Assembly: GCA_054661495.1 (NCBI GenBank)
Contig: BAAFSQ010000506.1
Location: 1-5,052, forward strand
Reading direction: 5' to 3'
DNA from: Zygophlyctis sp. KS116
Lineage: Eukaryota > Fungi > Chytridiomycota
Length of the DNA stretch: 5,052 bases
A model generated the notes under the pieces. That model was not told the DNA's origin. It saw only the letters and a list, made by a program, of their open reading frames with translations, and did no database searches. Shown here piece after piece: positions 1 through 5,052 of this stretch; positions within the stretch are counted from its first letter, which is position 1; each line of letters begins with the position of its first letter. Position numbers and translations under genes: made by a program.

Positions 1-58
1 TGATATCTTGGTAGGTGTTCTAGATGTGTTAGGTGTTGCTCCTAGTACCTTTTCCCTC

Positions 59-64
59 TATAAT
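59..64 (+). promoter_or_regulatory. Candidate TATA-like element (TATAAT) in U3
   Basis: Only TATA-like word upstream of the inferred start near 114-115; positional inference only. Confidence 0.45.
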
Positions 65-113
65 TCGACGAGGGTTTTTAACGGCTAGTAGAAGTGGCGT
101 ATTTTTCTTCTTT

Positions 114-125
114 TAGTAGTTTTAT
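114..125 (+). other. Putative self-primer / transcript 5' end, start of R (TAGTAGTTTTAT; copy at 4922-4933)
   Basis: Complementary to 249-260; directly follows a pyrimidine tract (102-114) and lies about 55 nt downstream of TATAAT; no ATG between here and 286. Confidence 0.7.
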
Positions 126-248
126 CGCCAATAAAACTTGTCTACTTCTGACGTGTTATCTGAGATCAATTAAAGGTCTCTAATTGTTAAATAATACTCG
201 GTTTTACCTATATTCAGGAATTTATAGAACCCACCTTTTTAACAAAGT

Positions 249-260
249 ATAAAACTACTA
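249..260 (+). other. Putative self-priming primer-binding site (ATAAAACTACTA)
   Basis: Starts 5 nt after the 5' LTR end (4-nt spacer), has no TGG tRNA-CCA complement, and is a 12/12 reverse complement of 114-125. Confidence 0.8.
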
Positions 261-285: not shown

Positions 286-3200
286 ATGAATTCTTCTAAT
301 CTTAATAATGTGTTTGAGCCAATCCCCGGCTCACCTGCTCCGTCTTCTGGAGTATCCAATTCAGGACCTTCTCAAGTTCAGGAATTGTCTCAGGTTCTAT
401 TGATGCTTAATAATCGTGTACAACAATTAGAATCTCAATTACAATCTCAGACTTCTAATCGTGGAGTTATATCAGGTGCGTCTCCAAAAGTTTCTCTCCC
501 AGATAAATTTACAGGCACTGCAGGAAAATGCAGAGGATTTTTGGTATCCGTGGAAAATATATTTGCCTTACAGCCTCAACGTTATCCTACTAGTGAAGTT
601 AAAACTCGCTTTATAGGTACTTTGCTTTCTAATCAGGCCTTGTCTTGGTTTACTGATGTTGCTTTGAATAAGACTTACCTCTTGGATGATTATCAACTCT
701 TTATCGAGGAATTTAGATCACTTTTTGAAGACCCAAATATCCAACGTAGGGCAGGGTCTACTTTGAAGAAATTATCTCAAGGAAAGGGATCAGTACTTGC
801 GTACTCGACGATCTTTCGTACTAATGCGGTTGACTCAGGATATAATGAAAGAGCCTTAATAGATATGTTTCGAGATGGTTTAAATTCGGAGATAAAAGAT
901 ACCTTGGCGGCTCACAATGTTTATTTTGAAGAATTGGAGCCTTTCATTAAGTATTGTAATGGCTTGGACAGAAGCATCTATGATAGAAAAATGGAAAAGA
1001 ATCACTTCAGTCCGGCAGTTGGTGGAAATTATGGCAGATCAGCCCGATTGGGAATGTCTAGTCGACCTCAGGCTAGTTACGATCGGCCTATGCACTCATA
1101 TGGACGCCCTCCTCGGCCTCCTCAATCTTATCCTCACAGCTCTTCTCAGTCTACCCCGATGGATCTTGATGCCGTTTACACCACCGATTCTAAGGGATTT
1201 AAGCATCTGACATTTGAAGAAAAGAAAAGACGAAAGGAAATGAATTTATGCTTGTATTGCGGAGAATCAGGCCACAATTATCCGAGTTGTCCTAAAAAAG
1301 GAACTAAAAGAGCTCTAAATGCTTTGCAGATTGCTAGTGTGCGATTTATGGAGAGTCTTAGTGAGCCATCGCTTTTTGCTTCAATAGAGATGGTCATAAA
1401 AGGTGTAGATTTTAATGTCAAGGCGTTGATTGACAGTGGAGCCAATGCTAACTTTGTGTCTGAAGAATTTGTGCACTCAAACGGTATCAAGCAACTCAAG
1501 TTAGCGGAACCGATAGTTGTGAGAATGGCTGATGGTAGAACTTCTGCCATTACTCAGTATTTGCCTCTAGTGACTGTTAAAGTTTATGGAAAGGGAACGA
1601 CTCATGATACTGCTGTTGATTTTCTTATTGTTAAGGGTCTTAAATTTTCAGTGATTGTTGGATCTCCCTGGTTGGCCAAAGCGAATCCTATTATCAATTG
1701 GCTTGAGAAGACTGTGGAATTTATGAACCCAGGTGATTTAATTGTGAAGGAACGTAGTTCCAATTTACCTTCTACGTTTAACTCTAGTGAAAATTATGAT
1801 TCGAGTAAGACATATGAAGAATATATTGAACCTGGACTGGAAAAAGATAAAGATGTTACTAATACAGGTGATTTAATTGCAAAGGAACGTAGTTCCAATT
1901 TTTATGATTCACTTAAAACTAGTGGAGTGGAAGTAAATATTCTACGTGTTCTTCCCCCCGGAGTCCCGAAAAACTATATGGATTATGCAGAGGTATTCTA
2001 TGATAATGAAGTGACCAAATTGCCTCCTACTCGCGCAATTGATCTTTCTATTACTCTCAAGAACCCCGATCAGAAGTTACCGTTCTTGAAGATTTATAAT
2101 TTGTCTTCTAAGGAGGAACTCATTCTTAAAAATTGGATAGACCAAAATCTCAAGGCTGGACTTATCAGAAAATCGACTAGTCCTGCTGCAGCCCCAATAT
2201 TTTTTGTCCCAAAGAAAGATGGCACCTTGCGACCTTGTATTGACTACCGCATGCTGAATGAAAACACTGTGAAGGATAAATTCCCTCTTCCTTTAATTTC
2301 TGATCTTTCAAACAAGTTTTCTCAGAGTGTCGTTTTTACTAAGTTAGATCTAAAAGGGGCTTACAATCTAGTACGGATAAAAGAAGGTCAGGAAAATCTG
2401 TGTGCATTTCGGTCAAAGTTCGGTCAATATGAGCCATTAGTGGTCCAGTTCGGACTTACTAATGCTCCCGCGGTTTTTCAGAGATTCATCAACTCTATTT
2501 TTGCTGATTTACTGGATGTTTACGTTGTCGTATACCTCGACGACATTCTTGTTTTTAGTTCCAGTCAGGAGGATCACATTATTCATGTAAAAGAAGTCTT
2601 ATCCCGCCTAAGAGATAATCAATTGGTGCTTAAGGCAGAAAACTGCGAATGGAGTGTGACTGAAGTTGAATTTCTGGGCTTTATTATATCAAAAGATGGC
2701 ATGCGTATGGCTAAGGACAAAATGTTGGCATTAAAAGAATTTCCTTCCCCAATAAATGTTAAACAAGTTAGGAGCTTTCTGGGTCTTGCTAATTTTTACA
2801 GGAAATTCATTTCTAACTTCTCGTCTATAGTAACTCCTCTGACAAGACTCACTAAGAAAAATGTGCCATTTATATGGGATGAAGTTTGTGCAGAATCGTT
2901 TGAAAATATCAAACAAGCAATTGCCGAGGATGTCGTACTCAAGTACCCTGTTGTTGATAGACAATTTAAACTGTATTGTGATGCCAGCGATTATGCGATT
3001 GGATCGATGTTGGCCCAAGAAGATGATGATGGAGTTATTAGACCATTGGAATTCTTTTCAAGGAAATTGGATTCTGCGGAATTGAATTATAGTACATATG
3101 ATAAGGAATTATTAGCTATAATTGATAGTTTAAAAAATTGGAGACACTACTTGGTCCATTCTGAAAAGGAAATTTTAATCTTTAGCGATCACAATAATTT

Positions 3201-4896
3201 ACAGTACTTCCGTTCCTCTCAGTTACTTAAACCTCGCCATGCGAGATGGGCGGAATTTCTAGCTCAATTCTCTTACAAAATTCTCCACATTAGTGGTAAA
3301 GATAATGTGGTTGCGGATGTCTTAAGCCGTCAGGGAACAAAGAAGAAAAACAAGGATTACCATGGGATTTTATTGGATAAGGTAGCTTTTGAAGATGAAG
3401 ATCTACCACCCCTAGTTATTAATTTGTTGGATTGTTTCTTAAATGTTGCGGAGGTCCATGATTATGTGGAAGACATTGCGAAGTACTTGGACTCAGAAGC
3501 CAATGACTGGGACTGTACCGAACACCCATTTTCCGAATATAAATCTCAAATTAAGAAGTTTTCAGTGATTGGTGATAAAGTTTATTATGATAGAGATAAA
3601 TGGAAGGCGCTATATCTACCTTTAGGACAACGAGAGGCAGCTATGATCAGGTGTCATGATATGTTGGGACATTTGGGGTACGACTCTGTCAAAGACTTAT
3701 TGGAGAGACGCTATTTTTGGCCTAATATGTCAGAGGATTTTAAAGCTTACATAAACAGTTGTGCCAGGTGCCAAAGAGCCCGTGGAGCTCTCCCCAAAGC
3801 CGCTTGTTTACTTCCTATTCCTCCAGTTGGTCATCCTTTCGAGAGATGGGGAATAGACTTTCTACAGAATCTGCCAATCACTAGATCTCAAAATCGACAT
3901 ATAATTACATGTATAGATTATGCTACACGATGGGTAGTAGCAGAAGCTGTACCGAGTATGGACTCGGATGTGGTAATTAAATTTCTTTATGATCGAATAT
4001 TCATGCAATATGGAATTACATTTGAAATTGTGTCAGATAGAGGACTTTCTTTTATGTCAGAGGCGGTTAAGCAGTTCTTAGATATGTATTCTATCAAACA
4101 TTTGCCAAGCAGTTCGTATCACCCGCAAACTAATGGCATGGTGGAATCCATGCATAGAATGATAAATCACGGGATAACTACAGCTATAGATAATGATCGA
4201 TCTCGATGGGATGAAGAATTAGCTCAAGTCTTATTTGCTATTCGCGTTAGAACTCATTCGGTGACTAAATATTCTCCTTTCACTTTAGTTTATGGAATAG
4301 AGCCGCGACTTTTCAGCGATGGGGAGCCTCCTATACAAGTCAGAATGCCTCTAGATGATGATGAGCGCAGAAGAATGGTGTTAGAGCGGACAGCTGAGGA
4401 ATTGGAAAATCTTGGTGAAATTAGAGGGGCAGCGTATAAACGCTCGGTAGCGCAAGCTGAAAGAATGAAGGGAAATGAGGCCAATGAATCTTATATTTTT
4501 AAATTTCAGGTGAATGACTGGGTGAAAAGAAGAAATTTTAGAAAAGAAAAGTTTCAAAATAATTGGTCAGGGCCATATTATGTGGTAGAACACGGGTTTC
4601 CAGGTACGTATAGACTTATGAAACCGGACGGTTCGATGGTGCCTAATCTTGTCAATGAATCACATTTGTTACCGTGGACATCACGAGAAGAAGAGGAAGA
4701 AATTTCAAGACTCCAGGAATTACACGAGCCAGTAAATGATTCAATGTTAGGAGCTGATGGATTCAGAGATGATAATTTCCAAGATTATGCAACTCAGGAG
4801 GAGGATAGTGATATCTTGGTAGGTGTTCTAGATGTGTTAGGTGTTGCTCCTAGTACCTTTTCCCTCTATAATTCGACGAGGGTTTTTAACGGCTAG
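286..4896 (+). CDS. gag-pol: Gag-Pol polyprotein, single frame, 1536 aa (Gag, aspartic protease, reverse transcriptase, RNase H, integrase)
   Basis: Uninterrupted ORF; ATG in acaaaATG context; motifs CX2CX4HX4C, LIDSGA, YLDD, CDAS/KELL/SDH/ADVLSR, HHCC, D-D35E and WSGPY all present in order. Confidence 0.97.
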   Translation: MNSSNLNNVFEPIPGSPAPSSGVSNSGPSQVQELSQVLLMLNNRVQQLESQLQSQTSNRGVISGASPKVSLPDKFTGTAGKCRGFLVSVENIFALQPQRYPTSEVKTRFIGTLLSNQALSWFTDVALNKTYLLDDYQLFIEEFRSLFEDPNIQRRAGSTLKKLSQGKGSVLAYSTIFRTNAVDSGYNERALIDMFRDGLNSEIKDTLAAHNVYFEELEPFIKYCNGLDRSIYDRKMEKNHFSPAVGGNYGRSARLGMSSRPQASYDRPMHSYGRPPRPPQSYPHSSSQSTPMDLDAVYTTDSKGFKHLTFEEKKRRKEMNLCLYCGESGHNYPSCPKKGTKRALNALQIASVRFMESLSEPSLFASIEMVIKGVDFNVKALIDSGANANFVSEEFVHSNGIKQLKLAEPIVVRMADGRTSAITQYLPLVTVKVYGKGTTHDTAVDFLIVKGLKFSVIVGSPWLAKANPIINWLEKTVEFMNPGDLIVKERSSNLPSTFNSSENYDSSKTYEEYIEPGLEKDKDVTNTGDLIAKERSSNFYDSLKTSGVEVNILRVLPPGVPKNYMDYAEVFYDNEVTKLPPTRAIDLSITLKNPDQKLPFLKIYNLSSKEELILKNWIDQNLKAGLIRKSTSPAAAPIFFVPKKDGTLRPCIDYRMLNENTVKDKFPLPLISDLSNKFSQSVVFTKLDLKGAYNLVRIKEGQENLCAFRSKFGQYEPLVVQFGLTNAPAVFQRFINSIFADLLDVYVVVYLDDILVFSSSQEDHIIHVKEVLSRLRDNQLVLKAENCEWSVTEVEFLGFIISKDGMRMAKDKMLALKEFPSPINVKQVRSFLGLANFYRKFISNFSSIVTPLTRLTKKNVPFIWDEVCAESFENIKQAIAEDVVLKYPVVDRQFKLYCDASDYAIGSMLAQEDDDGVIRPLEFFSRKLDSAELNYSTYDKELLAIIDSLKNWRHYLVHSEKEILIFSDHNNLQYFRSSQLLKPRHARWAEFLAQFSYKILHISGKDNVVADVLSRQGTKKKNKDYHGILLDKVAFEDEDLPPLVINLLDCFLNVAEVHDYVEDIAKYLDSEANDWDCTEHPFSEYKSQIKKFSVIGDKVYYDRDKWKALYLPLGQREAAMIRCHDMLGHLGYDSVKDLLERRYFWPNMSEDFKAYINSCARCQRARGALPKAACLLPIPPVGHPFERWGIDFLQNLPITRSQNRHIITCIDYATRWVVAEAVPSMDSDVVIKFLYDRIFMQYGITFEIVSDRGLSFMSEAVKQFLDMYSIKHLPSSSYHPQTNGMVESMHRMINHGITTAIDNDRSRWDEELAQVLFAIRVRTHSVTKYSPFTLVYGIEPRLFSDGEPPIQVRMPLDDDERRRMVLERTAEELENLGEIRGAAYKRSVAQAERMKGNEANESYIFKFQVNDWVKRRNFRKEKFQNNWSGPYYVVEHGFPGTYRLMKPDGSMVPNLVNESHLLPWTSREEEEEISRLQELHEPVNDSMLGADGFRDDNFQDYATQEEDSDILVGVLDVLGVAPSTFSLYNSTRVFNG
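484..990 (+). other. Gag capsid-like domain (PEG10/sushi-type Retrotrans_gag), boundaries approximate
   Basis: PKVSLPDKFTG...CRGFL...ALSWF...LSQGKGSVLAYSTIFR...FRDGLNSEIKD match the pattern of Tf1/sushi-group and PEG10-like Gag; preceded by a Q/L-rich probable coiled coil (about 373-450). Confidence 0.85.
1249..1290 (+). other. Gag nucleocapsid CCHC zinc knuckle
   Basis: CLYCGESGHNYPSC = C-X2-C-X4-H-X4-C, preceded by PMDLD (1156-1170) and LTFEEKKRRKEMNL, the usual context in chromovirus Gag. Confidence 0.95.
1372..1722 (+). other. Retropepsin aspartic protease domain, boundaries approximate
   Basis: ALIDSGANANFVS with catalytic Asp codon at 1432; VRMADG flap-like motif; VIVGSPWLAKANPIINW C-terminal motif. 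Confidence 0.93.
1730..1901 (+). repeat. In-frame internal direct repeat, 37 bp x2 (1730-1766 and 1865-1901), in the PR-RT linker
   Basis: caggtgatttaattgTGaaggaacgtagttccaattt vs caggtgatttaattgCAaaggaacgtagttccaattt, 35/37 identical, offset 135 nt; encodes GDLIVKERSSN / GDLIAKERSSN. Confidence 0.92.
2020..2949 (+). other. Reverse transcriptase (palm, thumb, connection), boundaries approximate
   Basis: SPAAAPIFFVPKKDGTLRPCIDYRMLN, KLDLKGAYNLVRI (Asp at 2347), FGLTNAPAVFQ, YLDD (2533-2544), FLGFII, VRSFLGLANFYRKFI. Confidence 0.97.
2962..3330 (+). other. RNase H domain (Ty3/Gypsy type)
   Basis: Acidic catalytic residues D (2980, CDAS), E (3106, DKELLAI), D (3187, SDH), D (3316, ADVLSR); ELNYSTYDKELL and RHARW motifs. 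Confidence 0.95.
3655..4677 (+). other. Integrase: HHCC zinc finger, DD35E core and GPY/F module; no chromodomain
   Basis: H3655-X4-H3670-X29-C3760-X2-C3769; D3856 (WGIDF), D4036 (VSDRG), E4144 (MVE) with 35 residues between the second D and E; FQVNDWV...WSGPYYV...TYRL...VNESHLLPW at 4504-4677. Confidence 0.95.
4796..4808 (+). other. Polypurine tract (plus-strand primer) AGGAGGAGGATAG
   Basis: 12 of 13 bases are purines, directly abutting the TG of the 3' LTR. Confidence 0.9.
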
Positions 4897-5052
4897 TAGA
4901 AGTGGCGTATTTTTCTTCTTTTAGTAGTTTTATCGCCAATAAAACTTGTCTACTTCTGACGTGTTATCTGAGATCAATTAAAGGTCTCTAATTGTTAAAT
5001 AATACTCGGTTTTACCTATATTCAGGAATTTATAGAACCCACCTTTTTAACA
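4809..5052 (+). repeat. 3' LTR (244 bp)
   Basis: Direct repeat of 1-244, immediately preceded by a purine tract. Confidence 0.98.
4938..4943 (+). terminator. Candidate polyadenylation signal AATAAA (5' LTR copy at 130-135)
   Basis: Canonical hexamer about 40 nt after the stop codon and just downstream of the inferred R start, followed by T/GT-rich sequence. Confidence 0.55.

What the first reader, a model, noticed from the sequence alone, without database searches (positions are those of the whole stretch)
114..260. tRNA-independent, self-primed reverse transcription signature
Seen: the sequence after the 5' LTR (aagtATAAAACTACTAgc) has no TGG, so it is not a canonical tRNA 3'-end PBS. Instead 249-260 pairs 12/12 with LTR 114-125 (TAGTAGTTTTAT), with a possible extra G:U pair at 261/113. 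The partner lies right after a CT-rich tract and about 55 nt downstream of TATAAT, where a transcription start is plausible. Established: S. pombe Tf1 primes minus-strand synthesis with the first 11 nt of its own mRNA, which anneal to the PBS and are cut off in an RNase H-dependent step; similar complementarity is described across the Tf1/sushi group. Inference: this transcript starts at about 114-115 and its first 11-12 nt are the primer.
Basis: partly seen in the sequence, partly recalled or inferred. Interest (0 to 1): 0.8.

Follow-up and report, generated by a model that had tools for sequence, protein, structure and literature searches.

The report
Self-primed LTR retrotransposon in a chytrid
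This is an intact jumping gene from a chytrid-like fungus that most likely starts copying itself with the first 11-12 bases of its own RNA instead of a tRNA; the trick is already known from fission-yeast Tf1, and here about 15 sister lineages show it with matching paired changes.

Summary
Bases 249-260, four bases after the 5' LTR, pair 12/12 with LTR bases 114-125. There is no TGG and no tRNA match.

The window is a complete Ty3/gypsy element: LTRs at 1-244 and 4809-5052, and one gag-PR-RT-RH-IN ORF.

The pairing is not chance. 19 related elements show the same layout with 15 different paired sequences. These are 14 families in this genome, four metagenome contigs and one Batrachochytrium salamandrivorans copy. 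Complementarity averages 10.8 nt with an element's own partner and 2.2 nt with other families' partners.

In nearly all of them the LTR partner lies:
- 33-43 nt after a TATA-like motif;
- directly after a pyrimidine tract, at a pyrimidine|purine step;
- before an AATAAA signal in 12 of the 19.

This fits a partner that is the 5' end of R.

This matches the published self-priming of Tf1, Tf2 and Tj1, and meets the published prediction criterion. The transcription start and the primer cleavage are inferred, because no usable RNA reads exist. The extra "pretzel" duplexes are not supported. The element lacks the chromodomain typical of the Tf1/sushi group.

The same scan has flagged Tf1-type self-priming on other pieces of this genome.

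Verdict: a known mechanism in new members.

The parts
1..244 (+). 5' LTR (TG...CA). Proposed U3 is 1-113, R starts at 114/115, and U5 ends at 244.
   Evidence: D1 (244 nt, 100% identical to 4809-5052)
59..81 (+). Promoter-like A/T motifs. TATAAT at 59-64 is 55 nt upstream of the primer start. TTTTTAA at 75-81 is 39 nt upstream and lies in a GGGTTTTTAAYGG block shared with sister families.
   Evidence: TATA-like motif 33-43 nt upstream of the primer start in most families
102..113 (+). Pyrimidine tract (tttttcttcttt) directly upstream of the proposed transcription start.
   Evidence: a pyrimidine-rich end of U3 in all 19 elements
114..125 (+). Proposed self-primer, the first 11-12 nt of the RNA (TAGTAGTTTTAT). 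The pyrimidine|purine step at 114|115 suggests a start at A115.
   Evidence: (I15)
126..128 (+). Unpaired C126 at the proposed cleavage point. G127 and C128 extend the helix by pairing with T248 and G247.
   Evidence: the base after the primer is C in 17 of 19 elements
118..138 (+). Local hairpin AGTTTTAT/ATAAAACT with loop CGCCA. Its 3' arm copies the first 8 nt of the PBS and overlaps the AATAAA at 130-135. It cannot form at the same time as the primer:PBS pairing.
   Evidence: I2; 8 bp, 2/1000 shuffles
245..248 (+). Spacer aagt between the LTR end (..CA) and the PBS.
   Evidence: spacer of 2-4 nt ending in GT or GA in 17 of 19 elements
249..260 (+). Primer binding site ATAAAACTACTA, complementary to 114-125.
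286..4896 (+). Single 1536-aa ORF: Gag (with a CCHC knuckle), protease, RT, RNase H and integrase. No chromodomain. The stop codon lies 88 nt inside the 3' LTR.
4796..4808 (+). Polypurine tract AGGAGGAGGATAG abutting the 3' LTR.
   Evidence: similar purine tracts before the 3' LTR in sister families
4809..5052 (+). 3' LTR. It carries the second copy of the primer sequence at 4922-4933.

Best explanation
The window is an intact Ty3/gypsy LTR retrotransposon that primes minus-strand DNA synthesis with the 5' end of its own RNA, as Tf1 of S. pombe does.

Proposed steps:
1. Transcription starts at 114/115, just after a pyrimidine tract and 39 nt after a TTTTTAA motif.
2. The first 11-12 nt fold back onto the PBS at 249-260, four bases after the LTR.
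3. The element's RNase H cuts the RNA after T125, next to the unpaired C126.
4. The freed 3'-OH is extended through U5 and R.
5. Strand transfer uses the R copy in the 3' LTR, which ends after the AATAAA at 130-135 (5' LTR numbering).

Shown here: the complementarity, its position, its covariation across relatives, the absence of a tRNA-type site, and the predicted fold.

Inferred: the transcription start, the cleavage, and the use of the duplex as a primer.
For: - The 12/12 duplex sits at the position where a PBS must lie. It arose in 1 of 2000 shuffles.
- The same layout occurs in 19 elements with 15 distinct paired sequences: 14 families of this genome, metagenome contigs L071, L072, L074 and L078, and B. 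salamandrivorans L075.
- Positions -5 to -10 of the primer each show 3-4 different Watson-Crick pair types. The anchored run averages 10.8 nt with an element's own partner and 2.2 nt (maximum 7) with other families' partners.
- The partner has a conserved context. TATAAA lies at -33 in C493 and C503, TATATAA at -39 in L075, and TTTTTAA at -35 to -42 in most others. A pyrimidine tract follows, with a pyrimidine|purine step at the first paired base. AATAAA lies 2-24 nt downstream in 12 of 19.
- The unconstrained MFE fold of the leader closes on the primer:PBS duplex in 8 of 10 families. In the window the pair probability is 0.95 and the duplex energy is -11.2 kcal/mol.
- There is no TGG in 241-300. 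No tRNA gene overlaps the listed near-matches to the PBS complement.
- The element meets the published prediction rule of at least 10 bp starting 0-5 bp after the 5' LTR (PMC6317226). It matches the description of Tf1, Tf2, Tj1, Tcry1 and Tosmo self-priming (10.1101/2022.12.06.519325; PMC4600332).
Against: - There is no direct RNA evidence for the start. The only runs found are metagenome contigs covering 844-1106, 3315-3465 and 3691-3841.
- The two extra duplexes of the Tf1 'pretzel' are not better than shuffled controls in any family.
- The gap between the LTR's CA and the PBS is 4 nt. Integrase would therefore have to trim more than the usual 2 nt.
- The tRNA test is partial. Only 62 tRNA coordinates and one tRNA sequence could be compared, and only 100 of the 210 near-matches were listed.
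- One LTR-like repeat pair in the genome (C308) lacks the signature.
Confidence: 0.85

Rival explanations
1. The complementarity is an RNA structure of the leader, for example for packaging, dimerisation or translation control. Reverse transcription would then be primed by something else, such as an unrecognised host RNA fragment.
For: Retroviral leaders do contain U5-leader stems next to the PBS (general knowledge). The duplex closes a multibranch fold of the leader. Priming itself was not observed.
Against: No other PBS candidate exists between the LTR and the gag ATG, and there is no TGG. The duplex starts 2-4 nt from the LTR end in all 19 elements, where the first templated base must lie. 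Every core duplex is perfect Watson-Crick pairing. That fits a PBS re-copied from the primer in each cycle better than a helix kept only by selection (for the pairing; the comparison is inference).
Confidence: 0.07
2. A tRNA or tRNA fragment primes the element through a non-canonical, internal match to 245-262.
For: Some copia-type elements use internal tRNA halves (PMC6317226). My tRNA comparison was incomplete.
Against: There is no TGG in 241-300. The site is 83% A+T, unlike nuclear tRNAs. The only exact genome match to the 14-mer complement is the PBS itself. None of the 100 listed near-matches overlaps any of the 62 tRNA genes. The PBS sequence differs in every family and tracks that family's own LTR, which a shared host tRNA cannot explain.
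Confidence: 0.02
3. The primer comes from the copy of the same sequence near the RNA's 3' end (4922-4933), or from the poly(A) junction, as proposed for other LTR families of this genome in earlier scan notes.
For: The sequence is present in both R copies. Earlier notes s1-545057 and s1-545058 propose poly(A)-junction priming in other families of this genome.
Against: The PBS has no T-run. The partner lies upstream of the AATAAA signal, so it is not at the RNA's 3' end. In the 3' context the sequence is predicted to be locked in the local hairpin.
Confidence: 0.04
4. The 12/12 match is a chance inverted repeat in A/T-rich DNA.
For: Other 12-nt perfect inverted repeats exist in the window, for example 102-113 with 3339-3350 (I14).
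Against: The match arose in 1 of 2000 position-restricted shuffles and 0 of 200 whole-window shuffles. It recurs with different sequences in 18 other elements.
Confidence: 0.01

Closest known systems
Tf1 and Tf2 of Schizosaccharomyces pombe (self-primed Ty3/gypsy elements; Levin 1995 and 1996, as cited in PMC4600332)
   Same: There is no tRNA PBS. The PBS just after the 5' LTR is complementary to an 11-12 nt LTR segment taken to be the RNA's 5' end. Gag and pol form a single ORF. A polypurine tract abuts the 3' LTR.
   Different: No chromodomain is detectable. The two flanking 'pretzel' duplexes are not supported. The host is a chytrid-like fungus. Neither the transcription start nor the RNase H cut has been shown.
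Tj1 of S. japonicus, Tcry1, and Tosmo1-3 (predicted self-primers; PMC4600332; 10.1101/2022.12.06.519325)
   Same: Self-priming is inferred from the same kind of complementarity between the LTR interior and the PBS, with the transcription start predicted at the first paired base downstream of a TATA box.
   Different: Those elements carry a chromodomain. [quoted passage not shown] They are reported to form the full three-duplex structure.
Tcn1 clade, which includes BatDenTy3-1 of Batrachochytrium dendrobatidis (PMC2864245); most members are predicted to self-prime (PMC6317226)
   Same: These are fungal Ty3/gypsy elements, some in chytrid hosts, that lack tRNA-type PBSs. The prediction rule is the same: at least 10 bp starting within 0-5 bp of the LTR.
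   Different: The Tcn1 clade is defined as chromodomain-bearing. I did not test the phylogenetic placement of this element against labelled Tcn1 sequences.

Membership tests
Self-primed (Tf1-type) LTR retrotransposons, mechanistic class | No tRNA-type PBS (TGG...) next to the 5' LTR | tested here: met
   There is no TGG in 241-300. ARAGORN finds no tRNA in the window. No tRNA gene overlaps the listed near-matches.
Self-primed (Tf1-type) LTR retrotransposons, mechanistic class | At least 10 bp of perfect complementarity between a site starting 0-5 bp after the 5' LTR and a site inside the LTR (rule of PMC6317226) | tested here: met
   12 bp, starting 4 bp after the LTR.
Self-primed (Tf1-type) LTR retrotransposons, mechanistic class | Complementarity kept through compensatory changes in relatives | tested here: met
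   15 distinct primer cores in 19 elements, all paired. The anchored run averages 10.8 nt with the own partner and 2.2 nt across families.
Self-primed (Tf1-type) LTR retrotransposons, mechanistic class | The LTR partner is the very 5' end of the element's mRNA | not testable with these tools
   No RNA reads cover the LTR. Indirect support comes from a TATA-like motif at -33 to -43, a pyrimidine tract, and a pyrimidine|purine step at the boundary.
Self-primed (Tf1-type) LTR retrotransposons, mechanistic class | RNase H-dependent cleavage of the RNA after the primer (between nt 11 and 12 in Tf1) | not testable with these tools
   This needs biochemistry. The only pointer here is the conserved unpaired C directly after the duplex in 17 of 19 elements.
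Self-primed (Tf1-type) LTR retrotransposons, mechanistic class | Three-duplex 'pretzel' structure of the 5' leader (10.1101/2022.12.06.519325) | tested here: inconclusive
   The central duplex is present and dominates the fold. A 2-3 bp extension lies past a one-base bulge. Duplexes between PBS-adjacent segments and the LTR are not better than shuffles (103-446 of 500).
Tf1/sushi group of chromoviruses, phylogenetic family | Chromodomain at the integrase C-terminus | tested here: not met
   PF00385 is not found in the whole polyprotein at E<=0.01, nor in the last 236 aa at E<=10.
Tf1/sushi group of chromoviruses, phylogenetic family | RT-RH-IN clusters with Tf1, sushi or Tcn1 in a tree | not tested
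   No labelled reference sequences were obtainable. The best named hits are B. salamandrivorans and Amoeboaphelidium (42-43% identity) and amphibian or fish proteins, most carrying a chromodomain (35-41%).
Ty3/gypsy (Metaviridae) LTR retrotransposon | LTRs with TG..CA ends, domain order gag-PR-RT-RH-IN, and a PPT before the 3' LTR | tested here: met

The most novel reading that the evidence does not exclude
A chromodomain-less lineage of chytrid Ty3/gypsy elements may couple self-priming to a two-state RNA switch. In the window, C344b, C537 and the B. salamandrivorans copy, the 7-8 bases after the primer copy the start of the PBS. They form a local hairpin that holds the primer's 3' end, with the AAUAAA signal in or next to it. 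The hairpin is predicted to form on the nascent RNA and in the 3' R copy. It gives way to the primer:PBS duplex only once the PBS is transcribed. This could link poly(A)-site choice to priming.
Probability: 0.2. Interest if true: 0.55.

Novelty: new member of a known kind. Interest (0 to 1): 0.35.

Why it matters
Self-priming has been shown experimentally only in fission-yeast elements and is otherwise predicted from sequence. This genome and its environmental relatives supply about 15 independent natural "compensatory mutants" of the primer/PBS pair. Three features stay fixed across them:
- a pyrimidine tract before the primer;
- a primer that ends in ..AT;
- an unpaired C after it.

These fixed features point to what the RNase H cut may recognise. 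The finding extends the mechanism to chytrid-like fungi and to elements without a chromodomain, so self-priming is not tied to the chromovirus integrase. For annotation, it explains why LTR finders that look for tRNA PBSs will miss or mis-score these families.

Tried and rejected
- **Full contigs.** I rebuilt contigs from loci returned by the RT/IN and Gag searches instead.
- **Closest relative.** C1050 and C1082 (82% identical in the U5 end and leader) carry the PBS variant ATAAAACAACTACTA. Their LTR interior is not assembled. A pattern search found only the two PBS copies and unrelated near-matches, so that pair could not be tested.
- **Target-site duplication.** The flanks from the overlapping contigs C517 and C698 show no duplication. 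They may belong to different copies.
- **RNA evidence.** Only two metagenomic runs hold about 5% of the sampled words. Their contigs lie inside gag and IN and say nothing about the start.
- **Pretzel flanking duplexes.** They are not above shuffled controls.
- **tRNA sequences.** tRNA loci could not be cut out. Only one tRNA (Trp) was present in the loci I held, with a 5-nt best match.
- **Primary Tf1 papers.** PMC109269, PMC1369541 and PMC1563812 are not held. Tf1 details therefore come from later papers that describe them.
- **C308.** Its 244-bp repeat pair shows no primer/PBS complementarity, and its interior was not fetched.
- **L073.** My first LTR boundaries were wrong, because the repeat is the end of pol plus the LTR start. 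I left it out, along with L076 and L077, which have no repeats.

Full report
**What is in the window.**
- The 5052-base window is one complete LTR retrotransposon and is also a whole contig (G000:C506) of a 12.7 Mb assembly.
- Two 244-nt LTRs with TG..CA ends lie at 1-244 and 4809-5052 and are identical.
- A single 1536-codon ORF (286-4896) encodes Gag, protease, RT, RNase H and integrase.
- A polypurine tract, AGGAGGAGGATAG, abuts the 3' LTR.
- The contig's ends overlap two other contigs by exactly 77 bases. It is therefore a repeat node of an assembly graph, and the LTR identity cannot be used to date the insertion.
- Earlier notes of this scan call the host a freshwater chytrid-like fungus. 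My own evidence agrees: the best named protein relatives are from Batrachochytrium salamandrivorans and Amoeboaphelidium (42-43% identity).

**The observation.**
- After the 5' LTR comes aagt, then ATAAAACTACTA (249-260). This is the exact reverse complement of TAGTAGTTTTAT at 114-125 (I15).
- There is no TGG between 241 and 300, so a canonical tRNA 3'-end site is absent.
- The 12-mer never occurred in 200 dinucleotide-preserving shuffles of the window.
- A complement this long between the 30 nt after the LTR and a shuffled LTR arose once in 2000 trials.

**Covariation across relatives.** This genome holds dozens of diverged Ty3/gypsy lineages, 36-68% identical in RT-IN to the window. I rebuilt contigs from the loci returned by the RT/IN and Gag searches. 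In each element I looked for the best complement between the bases after the 5' LTR and the LTR itself.
- Ten of eleven LTR pairs show a 10-15 nt perfect complement starting 2-4 nt after the LTR's terminal CA (in a few elements the blast-defined LTR end lies a few bases further upstream).
- Four more families on wrap-around contigs show the same.
- Outside this genome, metagenome contigs L071, L072, L074 and L078 and a B. salamandrivorans element (L075) do too.
- In all there are 19 elements with 15 distinct primer cores. Positions -5 to -10 from the primer's 3' end each carry three or four different Watson-Crick pair types.
- The complementarity anchored at the junction averages 10.8 nt with an element's own partner. 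With other families' partners it averages 2.2 nt, with a maximum of 7.
It removes chance as an explanation.

**Where the partner lies in the LTR.** The context of the LTR site is conserved.
- A TATA-like motif lies 33-43 nt upstream: TATAAA at -33 in C493 and C503, TATTAAA at -34 in C530, TATATAA at -39 in the Batrachochytrium copy, and TTTTTAA at -35 to -42 in most others. In the window it is at 75-81, which is -39.
- A pyrimidine tract follows.
- The first paired base sits at a pyrimidine|purine step. In the window this is T114|A115, which would make an 11-nt primer.
- The primer ends in ..AT in most elements, and an unpaired C follows in 17 of 19.
- AATAAA lies 2-24 nt further on in 12 of 19.

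This is the order expected if the partner is the first stretch of R: promoter, start, poly(A) signal. It also places the partner upstream of the poly(A) signal. That argues against the poly(A)-junction priming proposed in earlier notes for other families of this genome.

**Structure.**
- The minimum-free-energy fold of 114-290 closes on the 12-bp duplex and extends it by two pairs past the bulged C126 (z = -2.3).
- The pair probability is 0.95 and the duplex alone is worth -11.2 kcal/mol.
- In 8 of 10 families the unconstrained fold contains the whole primer:PBS helix. It is often extended by CTT pairing with AAG across a one-base bulge.
- The two further duplexes of the published Tf1 "pretzel" (10.1101/2022.12.06.519325) are not better than shuffled controls in any family. 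I score that feature as inconclusive.

**The tRNA rival.**
- No tRNA gene lies in the window.
- The only exact genome match to the 14-nt complement of 247-260 is the PBS itself.
- None of the 100 listed near-matches falls in any of the 62 tRNA genes located.
- The one host tRNA sequence I held matches by only 5 nt.
- This test is partial. The stronger argument is that each family's PBS follows its own LTR, which a shared host tRNA cannot explain.

**Comparison with what is known.**
- Self-priming was shown for Tf1. It is inferred from the same kind of complementarity for Tf2, Tj1, Tcry1, Tosmo1-3, vertebrate sushi elements, the Tcn1 clade and plant TAR elements (PMC4600332; 10.1101/2022.12.06.519325; PMC6317226).
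- The window meets the published prediction rule: at least 10 bp, starting 0-5 bp after the LTR.
- A B. dendrobatidis element was placed in the Tcn1 clade (PMC2864245). I found no paper describing self-priming for chytrid elements.
- Unlike Tf1/sushi chromoviruses, this element has no detectable chromodomain.
- I could not build a tree with labelled references, so clade membership is open. It works like a Tf1-type element, but I do not file it in the Tf1/sushi phylogenetic group.

**What remains inferred.** The transcription start, the RNase H cut after T125 and the actual use of the duplex as primer are not shown. The only public runs with this sequence are two metagenomic libraries whose contigs cover 844-1106, 3315-3465 and 3691-3841.

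**A side observation.**
- Bases 118-138 form a hairpin whose 3' arm repeats the first 8 nt of the PBS and overlaps AATAAA (I2).
- Similar 7-bp "PBS mimics" follow the primer in C344b, C537 and the Batrachochytrium copy, each better than about 99% of shuffles.
- Folding of growing transcripts predicts the hairpin until the PBS appears, and also in the 3' R copy.
It is the most novel reading still open.

**Verdict.** The mechanism is known. This element and its relatives are new members, with unusually rich natural covariation.

Noticed in passing
window 118-138 (and 4926-4946): A hairpin AGTTTTAT/ATAAAACT has a 3' arm that repeats the first 8 nt of the PBS and overlaps AATAAA (130-135). Comparable 7-bp PBS mimics follow the primer in C344b, C537 and the B. 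salamandrivorans element L075. Each reaches its length in no more than 13 of 1000 shuffles.
   Followed up: partly
window 1721-1789 and 1856-1924: A 69-nt direct repeat, 77% identical, lies inside the coding region between protease and RT. It is an internal duplication of a linker segment.
   Followed up: no
window 4809-4896: The polyprotein ORF runs 88 nt into the 3' LTR before its stop codon, and the polypurine tract lies inside the coding sequence.
   Followed up: no
window 1-77 and 4976-5052; L004 (C517), L003/L038 (C698): The window is a whole contig whose ends overlap two other contigs by exactly 77 nt. The flanks show no target-site duplication. The downstream flank (C698) runs into another gypsy element with a Gag 51% identical, which suggests a nested or clustered insertion.
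   Followed up: partly
G000, many contigs: A 12.7 Mb genome carries dozens of diverged Ty3/gypsy lineages, 36-68% identical in RT-IN. Many have uninterrupted ORFs of 1100-1500 codons, mostly on their own 4-5 kb contigs.
   Followed up: partly
G000:C537 (L041/L011), leader and 3' LTR: In this family the complementarity continues past a 2-nt bulge into a T-run before the primer and an A-run after the PBS, about 20 bp in all. Either the start lies further upstream there, or this is a by-product of base composition.
   Followed up: no
G000:C308 2324-2567 and 6558-6801: A 244-bp, 100% identical direct-repeat pair has a purine tract on one side but no primer/PBS complementarity. Its interior was not fetched. 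It may be a different kind of element.
   Followed up: no
L013 (G000:C550) 4187-4260; G000:C167 11203-11276: tRNA genes lie beside gypsy elements. A tRNA-Trp lies in the 3' flank of the C550 element, about 630 bp after the end of its RT-IN match. Another tRNA lies about 370 bp upstream of the C167 Gag match. This may point to tRNA-proximal insertion, as for Tj1 and Ty3.
   Followed up: no
window 844-1106, 3315-3465, 3691-3841: Contigs from one soil and one freshwater RNA-type metagenomic library match these parts at 99-100% identity. A JGI metagenome protein (P0001) is 99% identical. The element or its host therefore occurs in environmental samples.
   Followed up: partly
L070 (G000:C165) about 3779-3793, minus strand: TAGTAGTTGTTGTAT is followed by C and AAATAAA. 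This resembles the primer context of the C1050/C1082 family with one mismatch and may be a degenerate solo LTR.
   Followed up: no
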